Of a stretch of DNA of 64,000 bases, positions 3,330-63,612 are shown in pieces. Both the position numbers and the translations under genes were made by a program. Location: the IMG/VR virus record IMGVR_UViG_3300030419_004471, positions 149,602-213,601 of that record; one strand, written 5' to 3'. Numbering within the stretch: the first letter of the stretch is position 1; each line of letters opens with the position of its first letter. The notes below the pieces were generated by a model. The model was not told the DNA's origin. It was given only the letters and a program-made list of their open reading frames with translations, and did no database searches.

Positions 3330-3348
3330 TTTTTTCTCCTATTTAAAT

Positions 3349-5133
3349 TTAACCATCACACGCAACACAATCAGGGTCAACTGCTCTATCTGCAATATCA
3401 CCTCTGAGTACACTTTCCGTTCTCATATAATACAAAGTTTTTATACCTTGTTTCCACGCTTCCATTGTAACTTGATTAATCCACTTCGGTGTTGCAATCG
3501 AAGGGAACGCCAAATTTAATGATACGGATTGGTCAATATACTGCTGTCTAACACCAGCTTGCTTAACCAAATCCATTTGATTAATTTCTTTGAATGTTTT
3601 AAATACTTCTTTTACTGGATAAACCTTATCCCTATCTCCATTTTTAATATCTTTACATAATGTAAGTTTTCCATCTAAATAACACCATTTATCCAATTCT
3701 TTTAATGATTGAACAGAACCACCGTCATCCAATATTTTATCCCAAGTTTCCTTTTTATTTATACCAGCTTTTCTTAGTGCTTTTTCTAGCTCCCCATTCT
3801 TTCTAATAAATGTACCTTTAGAAGTTTGCTCAGTAAATACATTAGCTGCCCAAGGCTCAATACCTGGTGATACATTACCACTAAGTTTTGAATTACTAAC
3901 AGTTGGTGCAACTGCTCTTAAATGTGTATTTCTAAATCCACTTTCTCTACACCATAATGGTTCACCATATTCTTCTGCTAATTGTCTACTAGCTCTTTCT
4001 GATTCAATTTTTAATTGTGAAAATATTTTACGAGTTTCAAACTGAGCTTCCATACCTTCAAATGGAATACCTCTTTGTTGTAAGTAAGTGTGCCATCCTA
4101 AAACTCCTAATCCTAATGCTCTACCTTTTTCAGCAGATGCTACTGAATTTTCAAATCCTCTCATATTTTTAGCTTTCTGAATAAATTCTGAAAGTACTCC
4201 ATCTAAAAATATAGTTGCAGTATGAACTAAATCAGTATCTCTCCACTCATCATACTTTGCTAAGTTAAGTGAAGATAAACAACATACAAATGAATGATTC
4301 TCATCAGTATGTAAAGTGATTTCTGAACAGATATTAGTCATAAATACTTTTAATCCATTCTTTTTGTACATATCAGGATTACCTTTGTTTACATTACCTT
4401 TAAACATAATGTAAGGTTCACCTGTTGCTTTTCTTTTTTGTAATAATTTACCCCATTTTCTTCTTGCATCTTCATTACCATCTTGAAGTTTTCTCATAAA
4501 TTTATCACCAACGATTGCACATTGATGTAAATTAAGTGATTGTCTGTTTACATCACCTTTAGGTTCTCTTATCTCTAACCAATCTTCAAAATCATCGTGT
4601 TCAATGTTTAAGTTAACTGAAGCAGCTCCTCTTCTTACTGAACCTTGATTCGTAGCAAGAATTGTAGAATCATATATTTTTGCGAAAGGTACAACACCAT
4701 CTGATGTACCATTCATAGTAATTATAGAACCTGCTGGTCTAATTTGGTTAATACATATACCAACACCACCACCATGCTTTGCTAATAGCATTAATTCTAA
4801 ATTCTTTTTTCCAATCTCATAGATACTATCACCCACATCTATACCAAAGCAACTTATTGGTAATCCTCTATCTGTTCCAGTATTTGAAAGAACTGGTGTT
4901 GCTAAATTTAACCAACCTTTCCAGATGTAATCAAAGAACTTTGTTGCCATCTGAGGTTTGTTTAATCTTTGTGCAATACGAGTAGCTACTCTCCAATATG
5001 CATCTTTGGGTTTTTCACCAGGTAAAAGATACCCTTTTGAAATTGTTTTAACATATATTTCTGTATTTGCCCAAGATGGAAAATCTACATCAATTTCCCA
5101 TTCAAACTCTTCACCATAATTTTTTGCTGCCAT
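3349..5133 (-). CDS. nrdA: class Ia ribonucleotide reductase alpha subunit
   Basis: PISCF, TNICSEI, CCLSSLN, APTVSNS, TLYY and C-terminal CVAC motifs; short form without an obvious ATP cone. Confidence 0.95.
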   Translation of the reverse strand: MAAKNYGEEFEWEIDVDFPSWANTEIYVKTISKGYLLPGEKPKDAYWRVATRIAQRLNKPQMATKFFDYIWKGWLNLATPVLSNTGTDRGLPISCFGIDVGDSIYEIGKKNLELMLLAKHGGGVGICINQIRPAGSIITMNGTSDGVVPFAKIYDSTILATNQGSVRRGAASVNLNIEHDDFEDWLEIREPKGDVNRQSLNLHQCAIVGDKFMRKLQDGNEDARRKWGKLLQKRKATGEPYIMFKGNVNKGNPDMYKKNGLKVFMTNICSEITLHTDENHSFVCCLSSLNLAKYDEWRDTDLVHTATIFLDGVLSEFIQKAKNMRGFENSVASAEKGRALGLGVLGWHTYLQQRGIPFEGMEAQFETRKIFSQLKIESERASRQLAEEYGEPLWCRESGFRNTHLRAVAPTVSNSKLSGNVSPGIEPWAANVFTEQTSKGTFIRKNGELEKALRKAGINKKETWDKILDDGGSVQSLKELDKWCYLDGKLTLCKDIKNGDRDKVYPVKEVFKTFKEINQMDLVKQAGVRQQYIDQSVSLNLAFPSIATPKWINQVTMEAWKQGIKTLYYMRTESVLRGDIADRAVDPDCVACDG

Positions 5134-5134
5134 T

Positions 5135-5554
5135 TTATAATAATTTTATTTGTGATGAATCACCATAATTTCCAAATAATTCATCGTCTTTTTTAATATC
5201 TCTTAATGCTATTCCTGTATTGCTATCTATATTACCTTTTTCATACATAGTGTTTATCATAGCCAATGGTTCTGAAAATAAAAAATTAGTATCCTTTATC
5301 AATCTAAAACTGATATATGAATAATCATCATTTATTCTACTCCCATATGAACGTAACAAATATGCTAAAACTTCTTTAGGTAACTCCTTAGCTTCTTTAA
5401 ATCTTATTCTATACCATTTAGTTTTTCCTTCCCAATTTGGAAAAACCTGCTCTCCTTTCTTAATATCTACCAAAGCAAACAAACCAACACCGTGCACTTT
5501 GCTTGGTCTTTGATATGATTTTACACTCGTATTAAGATAATCAAATGGTTTCAT
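5135..5554 (-). CDS. SET-domain protein (putative lysine methyltransferase)
   Basis: PSKVHGVGLFALVDIKKGE and ALRDIKKDDELFGNYG motifs; NH motif degenerate (INTM). Start moved from 5620 to MKPFDY at 5554 to remove an 80-nt overlap. Confidence 0.75.
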   Translation of the reverse strand: MKPFDYLNTSVKSYQRPSKVHGVGLFALVDIKKGEQVFPNWEGKTKWYRIRFKEAKELPKEVLAYLLRSYGSRINDDYSYISFRLIKDTNFLFSEPLAMINTMYEKGNIDSNTGIALRDIKKDDELFGNYGDSSQIKLL

Positions 5555-61625: not shown

Positions 61626-61636
61626 AGTTTTTTATT

Positions 61637-62098
61637 TTATAATAATTTTAATTCTTTGTCTTTATAAGTGTCTGCATAATACCACTTTTTATCTTTTTCA
61701 TTATAAAGGTAAACAAATTCAGCACCAGACCCTTTAGAAGAATCTATGTACTTTGATATGTTATTTATCTTACCCTTTGTAAAGTATGAACCCTTTTCAC
61801 CTCTATCTCTACCATAGAATACAGTTTGACCTTTTAATTGATTATCAAACGAATGTCCTTTTCCACCATCCATCTTAGGCCCAAGTGAAGAAATACCAAC
61901 ACCTTTATCTATTTTCAAAAGTTGTTTTACCTTTCCACCTGAATAATATTTTTTTGCTGTCTTACCAACACCTGATTTATATCCATCATAATGTACATAA
62001 GTTGAAACTATATTTCCGTTTCTATCAATTAAACCAATTTGTGAACGTGTTGATTCATTAATTTGATATTCTGTTGGTATTAATTTTTTTAGTTTCAT
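61637..62098 (-). CDS. putative head-internal protein (TRSQIG...YVHYDGY...GAEFVYLY domain)
   Basis: MKLKKL...INE tag; paralog of the C-terminal domain of 62107..63612. Confidence 0.7.
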   Translation of the reverse strand: MKLKKLIPTEYQINESTRSQIGLIDRNGNIVSTYVHYDGYKSGVGKTAKKYYSGGKVKQLLKIDKGVGISSLGPKMDGGKGHSFDNQLKGQTVFYGRDRGEKGSYFTKGKINNISKYIDSSKGSGAEFVYLYNEKDKKWYYADTYKDKELKLL

Positions 62099-62106
62099 AT
62101 CTCTCC

Positions 62107-63612
62107 TTAAAATAATTTTTTTAATTCGTTATCTTCATAGGTATCAGCATAATACCATTTCTTATCCTTCATATTGTATAAATATACATATTCTGCTCCA
62201 CCACGGCTATCTGCACTTTTAATATATCTTGATAAAGTTTTCATATTACCTTTTATTGGCGAAGGTTTTTCATTATAGTATTCTATTGGTTTATCATCGA
62301 AGATTCCTCTTGCTCCACCTTTTTTGATTAGAGTTAAAACATCCTTTTCATTTTTCATATGTTTTTTCAAACCCTTTTTCATATTAGATGGATATCCATC
62401 AAAGTGAACATATGCTGATGCAATTTTACCACTTCTATCGATAACACCAACTTGGGAACGAGTTCCTTCTCTAAGTAAACCTTCCGGTAACATTGATTTT
62501 AGTTTTGTAGATGATTCCTTTTTAGCAGATAAAGCTTGTTTTATTCTATCTTGTAGGTCCTCAACAGCAGAATCAATTTCCATTTTTTCATTATATGTAT
62601 TTCCACCATCATCTTCTAAATCCTGCATTTCATCTTGCATAACCTCCAATGCTTTCATTTCATCAGAAATTTCTTCATACTCTTGGTCATCTATTTTTCC
62701 TTTAAGTGAAGATACAATTGATTCAAAATCTTTAGCTTTATATGCGTTATCTAAATCTTTTTTAGATTCTTCTTTCTTTTTCTCTATTTGTTTTTGGATT
62801 GCAGCTTTAAGTTTTTCACCATCGTTTGATAGTTTATCTACTACTTGTGGGCCTGATTTCTTAATTAAATTATTGATAAATTCTTGTTCTTCTTTACTTG
62901 TTATCCAAGCGAATTTTTTTTGATACCAATCATCATTATACTTATCTCCCTTTTCCCATACATCATCCGGTACTATTATTCTATTTTTATCATCTCTTGG
63001 AGCTTTTTCAGATGAATCAGATTTAGGTGTATCTCCTGCTCCACCTTTAAGTTTTTTTCCTAACTCTTTAGCGTATGCCATAGCATCTGCACTATTATCG
63101 AATGATTTATAAGTATCACCACCATCATCATCATCGTCTTTATAGAATTCAACCGAAAATTTCTTTCCACCAATCTCATCATCACCAATAAGAATATGAG
63201 CTTCTGAACCTTGTATTCCATATTCGATTGCACCAATGGAATTTATATCAACAACTGCATCTATACCTAATTCTTTATTTAGGTACAATTTAGTTTGATT
63301 AGCTGCAGCTATACTCATTTCGCCATCATCATCTTTACTTAATTTAGGAGGTTCTGATTTTCCGGCAGAAGAGTCACCTCCCTTCGCTGCCTTATCTTTT
63401 TTGAATATGTTTACTTTAGGAGTATCTGTTGGGTCTTTCTGTCCACCATCTTTATCACCTTTTCTTTTTTCGTGAGTTCCTGCTTTGATTGCAGCATCTC
63501 TTGCTGCTTTTGTTTTAAATACCGATGTCGTACCAGTCTCTTTACTTGTAGCAGTAAATACTTCTGCTTCAGTAATTGGCTGTAAATCGATAAGTCCACC
63601 TAATTTAATCAT
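62107..63612 (-). CDS. multidomain putative head-internal protein
   Basis: MIKLGGLI...ITE tag, low-complexity linkers, internal KLKSMLPE..LREG before the duplicated domain. Confidence 0.7.
   Translation of the reverse strand: MIKLGGLIDLQPITEAEVFTATSKETGTTSVFKTKAARDAAIKAGTHEKRKGDKDGGQKDPTDTPKVNIFKKDKAAKGGDSSAGKSEPPKLSKDDDGEMSIAAANQTKLYLNKELGIDAVVDINSIGAIEYGIQGSEAHILIGDDEIGGKKFSVEFYKDDDDDGGDTYKSFDNSADAMAYAKELGKKLKGGAGDTPKSDSSEKAPRDDKNRIIVPDDVWEKGDKYNDDWYQKKFAWITSKEEQEFINNLIKKSGPQVVDKLSNDGEKLKAAIQKQIEKKKEESKKDLDNAYKAKDFESIVSSLKGKIDDQEYEEISDEMKALEVMQDEMQDLEDDGGNTYNEKMEIDSAVEDLQDRIKQALSAKKESSTKLKSMLPEGLLREGTRSQVGVIDRSGKIASAYVHFDGYPSNMKKGLKKHMKNEKDVLTLIKKGGARGIFDDKPIEYYNEKPSPIKGNMKTLSRYIKSADSRGGAEYVYLYNMKDKKWYYADTYEDNELKKLF

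What the first reader, a model, noticed from the sequence alone, without database searches (positions are those of the whole stretch)
3336..62107. Possible translational switch: phage bS21 plus Shine-Dalgarno sites confined to late and high-demand genes in an SD-ignoring host phylum
Seen in sequence: perfect AGGAG sits 1-9 nt before 11 starts (trx 3336, Hc1 7326, SSB 15690, ORF 38243, tube 39892, sheath 42320, neck 54750, MCP 56521, rpsU 58117, 60879, 62103), with weaker AAGGA before scaffold, clamp and 60395. Six of seven genes directly behind host-type promoters have none. Established: Bacteroidota ribosomes largely ignore SD because bS21/bS18/bS6 sequester the anti-SD, with a C-terminal Tyr of Flavobacterium bS21 (Y54) implicated. 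By my recalled alignment (host KAAYIQ vs phage EAVREQ) the phage bS21 has Arg there. Inference: late-expressed phage bS21 replaces the host protein, frees the anti-SD and redirects ribosomes to SD-led virion mRNAs. bS21 phages are known; the gene-class SD partition here is a testable mechanism. The rpsU SD is only 1 nt from its ATG, an oddity that may be autoregulatory.
Basis: partly seen in the sequence, partly recalled or inferred. Interest (0 to 1): 0.9.

Follow-up and report, generated by a model that had tools for sequence, protein, structure and literature searches.

The report
Phage ribosomal protein paired with Shine-Dalgarno genes
A 214-kb marine phage that most likely infects Flavobacteriales, bacteria whose ribosomes normally ignore Shine-Dalgarno sites, carries its own atypical ribosomal protein bS21. 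It also places conserved Shine-Dalgarno sites in front of its most heavily used genes, and among related phages the two features occur together, which gives a testable idea of what phage bS21 does.

Summary
All 11 AGGAG coordinates are correct and I found one more, before the gene starting at 33858. Strong sites precede 12 of 68 window genes against about 1% of control windows. Eleven of the twelve lie 4-9 nt from the ATG.

"Confined to late genes" is too strong. Over 219 genes of the same genome, sites precede 9 of 40 virion-module genes and 9 of 179 others (p=0.0013).

The sites are gene-specific across hundreds of relatives. Sheath, tube, SSB and capsid genes usually have one. RecA, baseplate hub and exonuclease never do.

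The bS21 gene is real. Arg58 is invariant in the clade, and a conserved basic C-terminal extension is added.

A Flavobacteriales host is now supported by three lines:
- UvdE is up to 83% identical to genes in marine Flavobacteriales genomes.
- The early promoters match those of Flavobacterium phage immuto.
- Most genes lack a Shine-Dalgarno site.

New result: in relatives, a bS21 gene next to the capsid gene goes with Shine-Dalgarno use (20% of genes versus 2% in relatives without it). Relatives whose bS21 keeps the tyrosine use these sites just as often, so the Tyr-to-Arg change cannot be the whole mechanism.

The functional link between bS21 and Shine-Dalgarno use is likely. How it works is unproven.

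The parts
57846..58115 (-). rpsU: phage ribosomal protein bS21, 89 aa. Arg58/Glu59 stand where host Tyr54/Ile55 would be. It has a conserved basic C-terminal extension (residues about 62-89).
   Evidence: Pfam PF01165, E 8e-15. PDB bS21 matches. BLASTP to 7JIL chain z. Clade alignments A1 and A2. AF2 model with helices 16-30, 32-40 and 47-70.
58117..58123 (-). AAAGGAG only 1 nt before the rpsU ATG. The string AAATAAAGGAGA-ATG is conserved in 10 of 11 related phages, and AAAGGAGA-ATG in all 11.
57791..57811 (-). Terminator-like hairpin directly after rpsU, marking the end of the head-morphogenesis transcription unit.
56521..56527 (-). SD (AAAGGAG) 9 nt before the major capsid protein gene (54877-56511).
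   Evidence: Conserved as AAGGAGAGAAA in 9 of 9 close relatives that include the capsid gene.
54750..54754 (-). SD (AGGAG) 7 nt before the gp13-like neck/adaptor gene (53597-54742).
   Evidence: Conserved in 8 of 9 close relatives that include the gene.
42320..42326 (-). SD (AAAGGAG) before the tail sheath gene (39933-42311).
   Evidence: Of 76 related loci, 34 have AGGAG and 27 have another 4-mer of the SD core.
39892..39896 (-). SD (AGGAG) 9 nt before the tail tube gene (39394-39882).
   Evidence: Of 79 related loci, 43 have AGGAG and 22 another 4-mer of the SD core.
38243..38249 (-). SD (AAAGGAG) before an 86-aa ORF (37975-38235) of unknown function.
33866..33874 (-). SD (AGAAAGGAG) 7 nt before the 267-aa ORF 33055-33858.
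60879..60884 (-). SD (AAGGAG) 8 nt before the 156-aa ORF 60400-60870.
   Evidence: Conserved in most relatives.
62103..62108 (-). SD (AAGGAG) 4 nt before the 153-aa ORF 61637-62098.
15690..15696 (-). SD (AAAGGAG) 6 nt before the gp32-like ssDNA-binding protein gene (14856-15683).
   Evidence: Of 80 related loci, 33 have AGGAG. Absent before immuto SSB.
7326..7332 (-). SD (AAAGGAG) 9 nt before the Hc1 histone-like protein gene (7146-7316).
   Evidence: Relatives mostly have AAAGGAA instead.
3336..3340 (-). SD (AGGAG) 6 nt before the thioredoxin gene (3066-3329).
27229..27260 (-). One of eight early promoters of the form TTTGG-N-TTTTCGTATATTTG (-33/-7 type, spacer exactly 20). The -7 elements of the others start at 29544, 28597, 20398, 16187, 12412, 3221 and 1303. 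All eight are in the replication module, and no strong SD precedes any of the eight genes behind them (one has a weak AAAGGA).
   Evidence: Flavobacterium phage immuto has the same architecture.
27670..28569 (-). UvdE UV-damage endonuclease gene, used here as a host marker.
   Evidence: Pfam. It is 65-83% identical to genes in about 25 marine Flavobacteriales/Cryomorphaceae MAGs, including contigs of 1.06 and 1.39 Mb.

Best explanation
The window is the last 64 kb of a complete, circularly permuted 213.6-kb T4-like phage genome from Tara Oceans samples. The host is very probably a marine Flavobacteriales bacterium. Most phage genes start as host genes do, with an A-rich leader and no Shine-Dalgarno (SD) site. 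A conserved subset carries a 5-9-nt match to the 16S 3' tail, (A)(A)AGGAGA, 4-9 nt before the ATG. That subset includes the major capsid, sheath, tube, neck and ssDNA-binding protein genes, Hc1 and a few others.

The phage also makes its own bS21 from the head-gene transcription unit. I propose, as inference, that this protein replaces or outcompetes host bS21 on the 30S platform. Ribosomes carrying it would no longer hold the 16S tail away from mRNA, so SD-led phage messages would gain an initiation advantage. That would boost the proteins needed in the largest amounts.

In this clade, three changes fit that role: loss of the two tail-contacting residues (Tyr54 to Arg, Ile55 to Glu), a longer second helix, and a basic tail carrying an [RK]L[FY] motif. 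Because Tyr-type relatives also pair bS21 with SD sites, other features of the phage proteins must contribute too.

The SD abutting the rpsU start (1 nt) would be useless or inhibitory to SD-reading ribosomes. It could work as a brake on further bS21 synthesis. That is speculation.

Shown here: the sites, their conservation, the bS21 substitutions, the co-occurrence across relatives and the host affinity. Inferred: incorporation into ribosomes, release of the anti-SD, timing of expression and autoregulation.
For: The sites behave like SD sites.
- They are enriched about 15-fold over control windows.
- Spacing peaks at 7 nt across 286 sites.
- The variants seen in relatives (AAAGGAG, GGAGA, AGGAA, GAGGT) are all sub-strings of the anti-SD complement.

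The sites are conserved gene by gene.
- SD-like motif present: sheath 61/76, tube 65/79, SSB 43/80.
- No motif: RecA 0/80, hub 0/70, exonuclease 0/67.

Orthologous genes of Flavobacterium phage immuto have no such site. No bS21 gene was found in the 146 kb of immuto that I examined.

bS21 and SD use occur together.
- An SD-like motif precedes the capsid gene in 26/30 loci with bS21 and 6/21 without (p=3.4e-5).
- Strong SD sites: 62/309 genes versus 4/200.
- bS21 presence changes at least 5 times on the capsid-protein tree, and SD use never goes the opposite way.
- The sister pairs L179/L186 (with bS21) and L180/L184 (without) show this at about 67% capsid-protein identity.

bS21 residues: R58/E59 align with Y54/I55, and R58 is invariant.

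Published results: Tyr54 stacks on A1534 and Ile55 contacts the 16S tail (PMC7797042). Y54A ribosomes translate SD reporters about 3-fold better (PMC9976891).

Host.

rpsU lies in the head operon with a terminator after it.
Against: - Relatives whose bS21 keeps Tyr54 and a short, host-like C-terminus use SD sites as much as Arg-type ones.
- SSB, Hc1, trx and glutamine synthetase carry SD sites although they lie outside the late module.
- One clade without a bS21 gene next to the capsid gene (L191-L197) still has AGGAG or AGGA before that gene.
- 'Absent' means absent from the roughly 4 kb seen upstream of the capsid gene, not from the whole genome.
- The phylogenetic sign test has too few independent pairs to reach significance (p at best 0.125).
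- GGAGG is avoided: G follows GGAG in only 4.5% of sites. This is odd if stronger pairing were favoured.
- There is no direct evidence of expression, incorporation or anti-SD release.
Confidence: 0.5

Rival explanations
1. SD-led phage genes are read by ribosomes that lack bS21 altogether. Infection stops host rpsU expression and bS21 is loosely bound, so bS21-free, SD-competent ribosomes build up. The phage bS21 gene then serves to keep enough complete ribosomes for the SD-less majority of phage genes, not to free the anti-SD.
For: - Ribosomes lacking bS21 gain activity on SD mRNAs and lose activity on SD-less ones (PMC9976891).
- This explains why Tyr-type and Arg-type phage bS21 both go with SD sites.
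- Several phage rpsU genes carry their own host-like SD: AAAGGAGG in L014 and A(A)GAGGTTAC before short-type rpsU genes.
Against: - It does not explain the invariant Arg58/Glu59 or the conserved basic extension in this clade.
- A fully sequestering phage bS21 would work against the phage's own SD-led capsid and tail genes.
- The 1-nt spacing before rpsU here is a poor fit for activation by free-anti-SD ribosomes.
Confidence: 0.2
2. The particular Flavobacteriales hosts of the bS21-carrying phages read SD sites natively or partly. The phage simply uses SD sites for strong genes, and bS21 is an unrelated auxiliary gene that happens to share the same lineage history.
For: - The host is inferred, not known, and host ribosomal genes were not retrievable.
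- The bS21/SD association is clade-structured, and only 4-5 independent transitions were found.
Against: - Tyr54 and the sequestering residues are reported as conserved across the phylum (PMC7797042).
- rpsU is reported as the only gene with an obvious SD in F. johnsoniae, as in many other Flavobacteriales (PMC9976891).
- The Flavobacteriales uvdE genes closest to the phage gene have no SD.
- Close sister phages differ in SD use exactly where they differ in bS21.
- In the window, 49 of 68 genes have neither a strong nor a weak site.
Confidence: 0.15
3. The AGGAGA motif is not read by 16S rRNA at all. It is a binding or cleavage site for a phage protein (a translational activator or repressor, or a RegB-like GGAG endonuclease), or part of a late promoter or initiator region.
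For: - The consensus is AGGAGA rather than GGAGG, with G avoided after GGAG.
- Several sites follow TATA-rich elements.
Against: - The distance is fixed relative to the ATG, not to upstream elements, while the flanks diverge.
- Variants slide along the anti-SD complement.
- The TATATTTATA element occurs before genes with and without the motif.
- Nothing annotated as a RegB-type nuclease turned up in the Pfam and PHROGs annotation, which left many ORFs without a hit.
Confidence: 0.1

Closest known systems
bS21-encoding phages of Bacteroidota from freshwater lakes (Chen et al. 2022, PMC9723584)
   Same: Large myoviruses predicted to infect Bacteroidota. bS21 lies among the head genes and is proposed to substitute into host ribosomes late in infection and favour phage mRNAs.
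   Different: In that study all 61 proteins keep Tyr54 or another aromatic residue. The gene is on the opposite strand, and the authors infer that the anti-SD stays blocked. No SD pattern is mentioned in the passages I read. Here the gene is on the same strand, Arg58 is invariant, a basic extension is added, and SD sites mark specific genes.
Host rpsU autoregulation in Flavobacteriales (Jha et al. 2021, PMC7797042; McNutt et al. 2023, PMC9976891)
   Same: The composition of the ribosome with respect to bS21 decides whether an SD is read. An SD sits at an rpsU gene.
   Different: In the host a single gene (rpsU) has an extended, well-spaced SD that is read by bS21-free ribosomes. Here a dozen or more phage genes have one. 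The phage rpsU SD is 1 nt from the ATG. The proposed effector is a variant bS21, not the absence of bS21.
Francisella tularensis bS21 paralogues (PMC9578407)
   Same: Alternative bS21 proteins change which mRNAs a ribosome prefers (abstract).
   Different: That is a chromosomal paralogue system in a gammaproteobacterium. It is not a phage takeover and is not linked to anti-SD sequestration.
Pelagibacter phage HTVC008M bS21 (Mizuno et al. 2019, PMC6375957)
   Same: A T4-like marine myovirus encoding bS21. The protein enters E. coli ribosomes.
   Different: That gene was acquired from its alphaproteobacterial host, and no SD link was reported. Its capsid protein is only 32% identical over half the length.
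RLY/KLY C-terminal motif of proteobacterial bS21 (Watson et al. 2020, PMC7550191)
   Same: A basic C-terminal helix lies beside the SD helix and ends in an [RK]L[YF] anchor. The phage clade has ...I[RK]L[FYH]TKKRKK.
   Different: In the phage the motif is followed by a poly-basic tail, and its contacts are unknown. That study looked for a relation between phage S21 and ribosome-binding sites and found none.

Membership tests
Ribosomal protein bS21 (Pfam PF01165) | Sequence match above the curated threshold | tested here: met
   54.7 bits against a cutoff of 27, covering profile positions 1-54 of 55. 33 PDB bS21 chains match at E<0.01.
Ribosomal protein bS21 (Pfam PF01165) | Two-helix fold of a small basic protein | tested here: inconclusive
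   The AF2 model (pLDDT 82.6) has helices 16-40 and 47-70. Foldseek against the PDB gives only weak matches to mitochondrial bS21 (E>0.2).
Ribosomal protein bS21 (Pfam PF01165) | Binds the 30S platform next to the 16S 3' end | not testable with these tools
   Needs ribosome purification or cryo-EM.
Bacteroidota-type (anti-SD-sequestering) bS21 | Signature Tyr54 (stacks on A1534) followed by Ile55 | tested here: not met
   Arg58/Glu59 stand at these positions. Arg is invariant in 38 clade members.
Bacteroidota-type (anti-SD-sequestering) bS21 | Short C-terminus that is less basic than in other phyla | tested here: not met
   The protein has about 25 extra residues ending in TKKRKKGKRK. 7JIL chain z is 64 aa.
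bS21 phage clades of Chen et al. 2022 | bS21 on the reverse strand within the head-gene block, with an aromatic residue at position 54 | tested here: not met
   The gene is on the same strand as all neighbours and has Arg at position 54.
bS21 phage clades of Chen et al. 2022 | Bacteroidota host | tested here: met
   By inference only: UvdE is up to 83% identical to Flavobacteriales MAG genes, the promoter architecture matches immuto, and the cultured relatives infect Flavobacterium and Rhodothermus.
Shine-Dalgarno translation initiation site | Complementary to the 16S 3' tail and placed about 4-10 nt before the start codon | tested here: met
   5-9 nt matches to AGAAAGGAGG at 4-9 nt for 11 of 12 sites. 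Family-wide the spacing peaks at 7 nt. The rpsU site, at 1 nt, fails the spacing criterion.
Shine-Dalgarno translation initiation site | Enriched at starts over background and conserved at orthologous genes | tested here: met
Shine-Dalgarno translation initiation site | Actually pairs with 16S rRNA and raises initiation | not testable with these tools
   Needs reporters, toeprinting or ribosome profiling.

The most novel reading that the evidence does not exclude
Phage bS21 turns SD-blind Flavobacteriales ribosomes into SD-reading ones. This would give the phage a private translation channel for its highest-demand proteins, with the SD that abuts the rpsU start acting as a negative-feedback brake. 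It would be the first defined function for the most common phage-encoded ribosomal protein, and a natural example of a virus changing how ribosomes select mRNAs through a single exchangeable protein.
Probability: 0.4. Interest if true: 0.9.

Novelty: new variant of a known kind. Interest (0 to 1): 0.8.

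Why it matters
[quoted passage not shown] An earlier attempt to link phage S21 to ribosome-binding sites found nothing (PMC7550191). 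Here a very abundant marine phage family shows three things:
- a gene-specific, conserved set of Shine-Dalgarno sites in a host group that ignores such sites;
- co-occurrence of those sites with a phage bS21 gene across several gains or losses of that gene;
- in one clade, replacement of exactly the residue whose mutation is known to unlock Shine-Dalgarno reading.

F. johnsoniae genetics, reporters and ribosome structures already exist, so the idea can be tested directly. It also suggests that gene callers and expression models for Bacteroidota phages should not assume these sites are absent.

Tried and rejected
- tblastn of the phage bS21 against 50,697 phage records found nothing at E<=1e-3. 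Searching with a Bacteroidota-type bS21 instead found comparison phages.
- A genome-contig scan with the bS21 alignment found no cellular relative. The family is known only from metagenomic, phage-sized contigs.
- The generic Bacteroidota promoter pattern is not enriched by count: 4 matches against 3.9 expected. Only the extended repeated motif is significant: 4 against 0.14. It also fits a sigma-70 layout, so taken alone it does not identify the host. The match to immuto promoters and the UvdE result carry that argument.
- Foldseek of the bS21 model was uninformative.
- PHROGs and Pfam gave no function for several SD-led ORFs (60400-60870, 61637-62098, 37975-38235, 33055-33858), nor for the presumed scaffold and clamp.
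- Rfam found only tRNAs.
- The idea that the rpsU SD is merely the spacer of a T4-like late promoter was dropped, because the upstream TATTTAAATA is not conserved among relatives while AAAGGAGA is.
- The apparent SD enrichment in the huge phage LR756501 comes mostly from a repeated coding motif of paralogous genes.
- The reading 'Tyr-to-Arg explains SD use' was rejected as a general rule.
- About 47 kb of the genome (ENA contig coordinates 34,935-81,550) was not reached.

Full report
**What the window is**

All 68 ORFs of 50 codons or more lie on the minus strand, and GC is about 31%. The window is the last 64 kb of JGI contig Ga0183741_1000002 (213,601 bp). An independent Tara Oceans assembly gives 213,657 bp with different ends, so the genome is complete and circularly permuted.

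Read in the direction of transcription, the window holds a T4-like virion module. Its genes are the prohead protease, several unknown ORFs, rpsU, the presumed scaffold, the gp23-like capsid protein, the gp13-like neck protein, tail fibres, sheath, tube and baseplate. A replication and nucleotide-metabolism module follows. It encodes UvdE, PolB, gp32-like SSB, RecA, a 5'-3' exonuclease, clamp loader, DnaB, Hc1, ribonucleotide reductase and thioredoxin. Terminase and portal lie just upstream of the window.

**The observation**

One site was missed, before the gene starting at 33858. Eleven of the 12 sites are 4-9 nt from the ATG, and the rpsU site is 1 nt away.

- Strong sites precede 12 of 68 starts, against 1.2% of control windows inside genes.
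- I walked along the same genome to about 167 kb and 219 genes. Eighteen genes have a strong site. At the 191-gene stage this was 18 of 191 against a control rate of 2.0%, p=5.6e-8.
- AGGAG positions cluster 4-10 nt before starts.
- By class, the virion module has 9/40 and the rest 9/179 (Fisher p=0.0013).
- Terminase, portal and protease have no site. SSB, Hc1, thioredoxin and a glutamine synthetase do.

The pattern is therefore better described as 'a conserved subset enriched in abundant virion proteins' than as 'late genes only'.

**Conservation across relatives**

Ten IMG/VR contigs with a bS21 that is 64-78% identical keep AAGGAGAGAAA before the capsid gene. They also keep the neck-gene site and the exact string AAAGGAGA-ATG at rpsU, while the flanking intergenic sequence diverges.

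In 80 related loci each, an SD-like motif is present as follows.

| Gene | Loci with an SD-like motif |
|---|---|
| Sheath | 61/76 |
| Tube | 65/79 |
| SSB | 43/80 |
| RecA | 0/80 |
| Baseplate hub | 0/70 |
| Exonuclease | 0/67 |
| 114-aa ORF (window 15815-16159) | 0/68 |

Over 1,792 distinct upstream regions, the spacing of GGAG peaks at 7 nt. The variants are all sub-strings of the anti-SD complement. These are the properties expected of real Shine-Dalgarno (SD) sites.

**The bS21 protein**

Pfam PF01165 scores 54.7 bits. Residues 1-60 of F. johnsoniae bS21 (7JIL chain z) were recovered through a phage homologue. BLASTP then aligns phage EAVREQ with host KAAYIQ, so Arg58 matches Tyr54 and Glu59 matches Ile55.

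- Tyr54 stacks on A1534 and Ile55 contacts the 16S tail (PMC7797042).
- The Y54A mutation alone raises translation of SD reporters 1.7-3 fold in vivo and 3 fold in vitro, and leaves SD-less reporters unchanged (PMC9976891).
- Arg58 and Ala56 are invariant in 38 representatives of the clade. A roughly 25-residue extension...LEKIExGDxxI[RK]L[FYH]TKKRKK, is conserved.
- The AF2 model puts Arg58 in a long helix (residues 47-70) followed by an extended basic tail.
- The extension recalls the basic C-terminus and RLY/KLY anchor of proteobacterial bS21, which lies beside the SD helix (PMC7550191). This is a resemblance, not a test.
- The family has 94 clusters, all from metagenomic contigs of up to 244 kb, and no relative in 185,579 species genomes.

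**The host**

- The phage UvdE is 65-83% identical to genes in about 25 marine Flavobacteriales/Cryomorphaceae MAGs, including contigs of 1.06 and 1.39 Mb. Those genes have 26-31% GC, no SD and a TAnnTTTG-like -7 element.
- Eight early promoters in the window share TTTGG, a 20-nt spacer and TTTTCGTATATT[TA][GA]. Flavobacterium phage immuto has the same architecture.
- The nearest cultured relatives by capsid protein are Mel-JY01, immuto and Rhodothermus phage RM378.

I put a Bacteroidota host at about 0.85.

**Comparisons that bear on the mechanism**

- Immuto infects Flavobacterium, and no bS21 gene was found in the 146 kb I examined. It has strong sites before 5 of 202 genes, which is at or below background. 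It has none before the capsid, sheath, tube or SSB genes.
- Two huge phages with a Tyr54-type bS21 (LR756504 and LR756501) show essentially no SD use. The exception is a host-like AAAGGAGG before the rpsU of LR756501.
- Among 80 more distant capsid-gene loci (50-69% identity), 31 have a syntenic bS21 gene.
  - An SD-like motif precedes the capsid gene in 26/30 loci with bS21 and in 6/21 without (p=3.4e-5).
  - Strong sites occur at 62/309 genes versus 4/200.
- On the capsid-protein tree, bS21 presence changes at least five times. In the four independent pairs, SD use moves the same way about three times and never the opposite way. That is too few pairs for significance.
- A clean example: L179 and L186 have rpsU and AGGAG before the capsid gene. 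Their sisters L180 and L184 keep the gene order but lack both.

Eight of the relatives have a true Tyr-type bS21 (for example KYFQQ) with a short, host-like C-terminus. They use SD sites as often as Arg-type ones: 20/86 versus 26/160 genes. The Tyr-to-Arg change therefore cannot be the general switch, and some other shared property of phage bS21, or a different logic, must be involved. One such logic is that bS21-free ribosomes read the SD sites while the phage gene maintains the balance of ribosome types. One bS21-less clade also keeps a site before its capsid gene.

**rpsU context**

The gene follows its upstream neighbour by 23 nt inside the head-gene unit, and a terminator-like hairpin comes directly after it. 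The SD 1 nt before the ATG is too close to assist initiation. Its strict conservation suggests a function, and my preferred guess is negative feedback by SD-reading ribosomes. Nothing here tests that.

**Literature**

Phage bS21 and the idea that it redirects ribosomes are known (PMC6375957, PMC9723584). Watson et al. looked for a link between phage S21 and ribosome-binding sites and found none. I found no paper that links a phage bS21 to SD use in Bacteroidota phages.

**Verdict**

Coupling between bS21 and SD use is likely. The tyrosine story is plausible for this clade but is not sufficient on its own.

Noticed in passing
L018 (PP395634.1 60000-109999) and L015:17167-17394: 'Microcystis phage Mel-JY01' has about 10 textbook Bacteroidota-type promoters ([CT]TTG-N20-TAnnTTTG) in 50 kb, against two sigma-70-like matches. 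It also has a syntenic Arg-type bS21 and SD-like sites (ACAGGAA before early genes, GGAGA before capsid, sheath and tube). Its recorded cyanobacterial host may need re-checking.
   Followed up: partly
L014:19995-20195 (LR756501.1): A 735-kb uncultured phage has a Tyr54-type bS21 whose own start is preceded by AAAGGAGG at 4 nt. This resembles the host rpsU autoregulatory SD. Its neighbouring genes lack SD sites.
   Followed up: partly
L202, L212, L213, L220, L222, L229, L238, L252 (rpsU starts): A short-type phage bS21 (62-67 aa, one of 87 aa) appears to start at TTG or GTG 4-6 nt after A(A)GAGGTTAC or GGAGGTTAC. This is a third way of arranging an SD at a phage rpsU gene.
   Followed up: no
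window 27224-27260: The -7 element of an early promoter ends 4 nt before the ATG of the 425-aa ORF 25947-27224. That would give a leaderless or nearly leaderless mRNA.
   Followed up: no
L269:531-2181 (also L268:10340-11991): A 1.65-kb stretch of the same genome has no called gene, no tRNA and no Rfam match.
   Followed up: partly
family-wide, 286 GGAG sites: The base after GGAG is A in 72% of sites and G in 4.5% (13% expected). The consensus is AGGAGA and the canonical GGAGG is avoided.
   Followed up: partly
window 10458-11678: A DruA-like protein (the Druantia defence family, Pfam PF14236, 73 bits) is encoded between the presumed clamp and the clamp loader inside the phage replication module.
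   Followed up: no
window 16212-18725, 25947-27224, 24870-25943: A full family-B DNA polymerase coexists with a weak family-A polymerase fragment. An ORF with a sub-threshold HNH match (20.7 bits against a cutoff of 21.4) lies next to that fragment. Immuto has family A polymerases instead.
   Followed up: no
window 61637-62098 and 62107-63612: The 153-aa SD-led ORF is a paralogue of the C-terminal part of the preceding 501-aa protein (both match phrog_1987).
   Followed up: no
window 1332-2880: Two adjacent Mom-like genes (PF25680, from the precomputed notes) point to DNA modification.
   Followed up: no
window 57876-57890 (bS21 residues 76-80): The conserved I[RK]L[FYH]T motif in the C-terminal extension resembles the RLY/KLY head-contact motif of gamma- and betaproteobacterial bS21, which Bacteroidota bS21 lacks.
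   Followed up: partly
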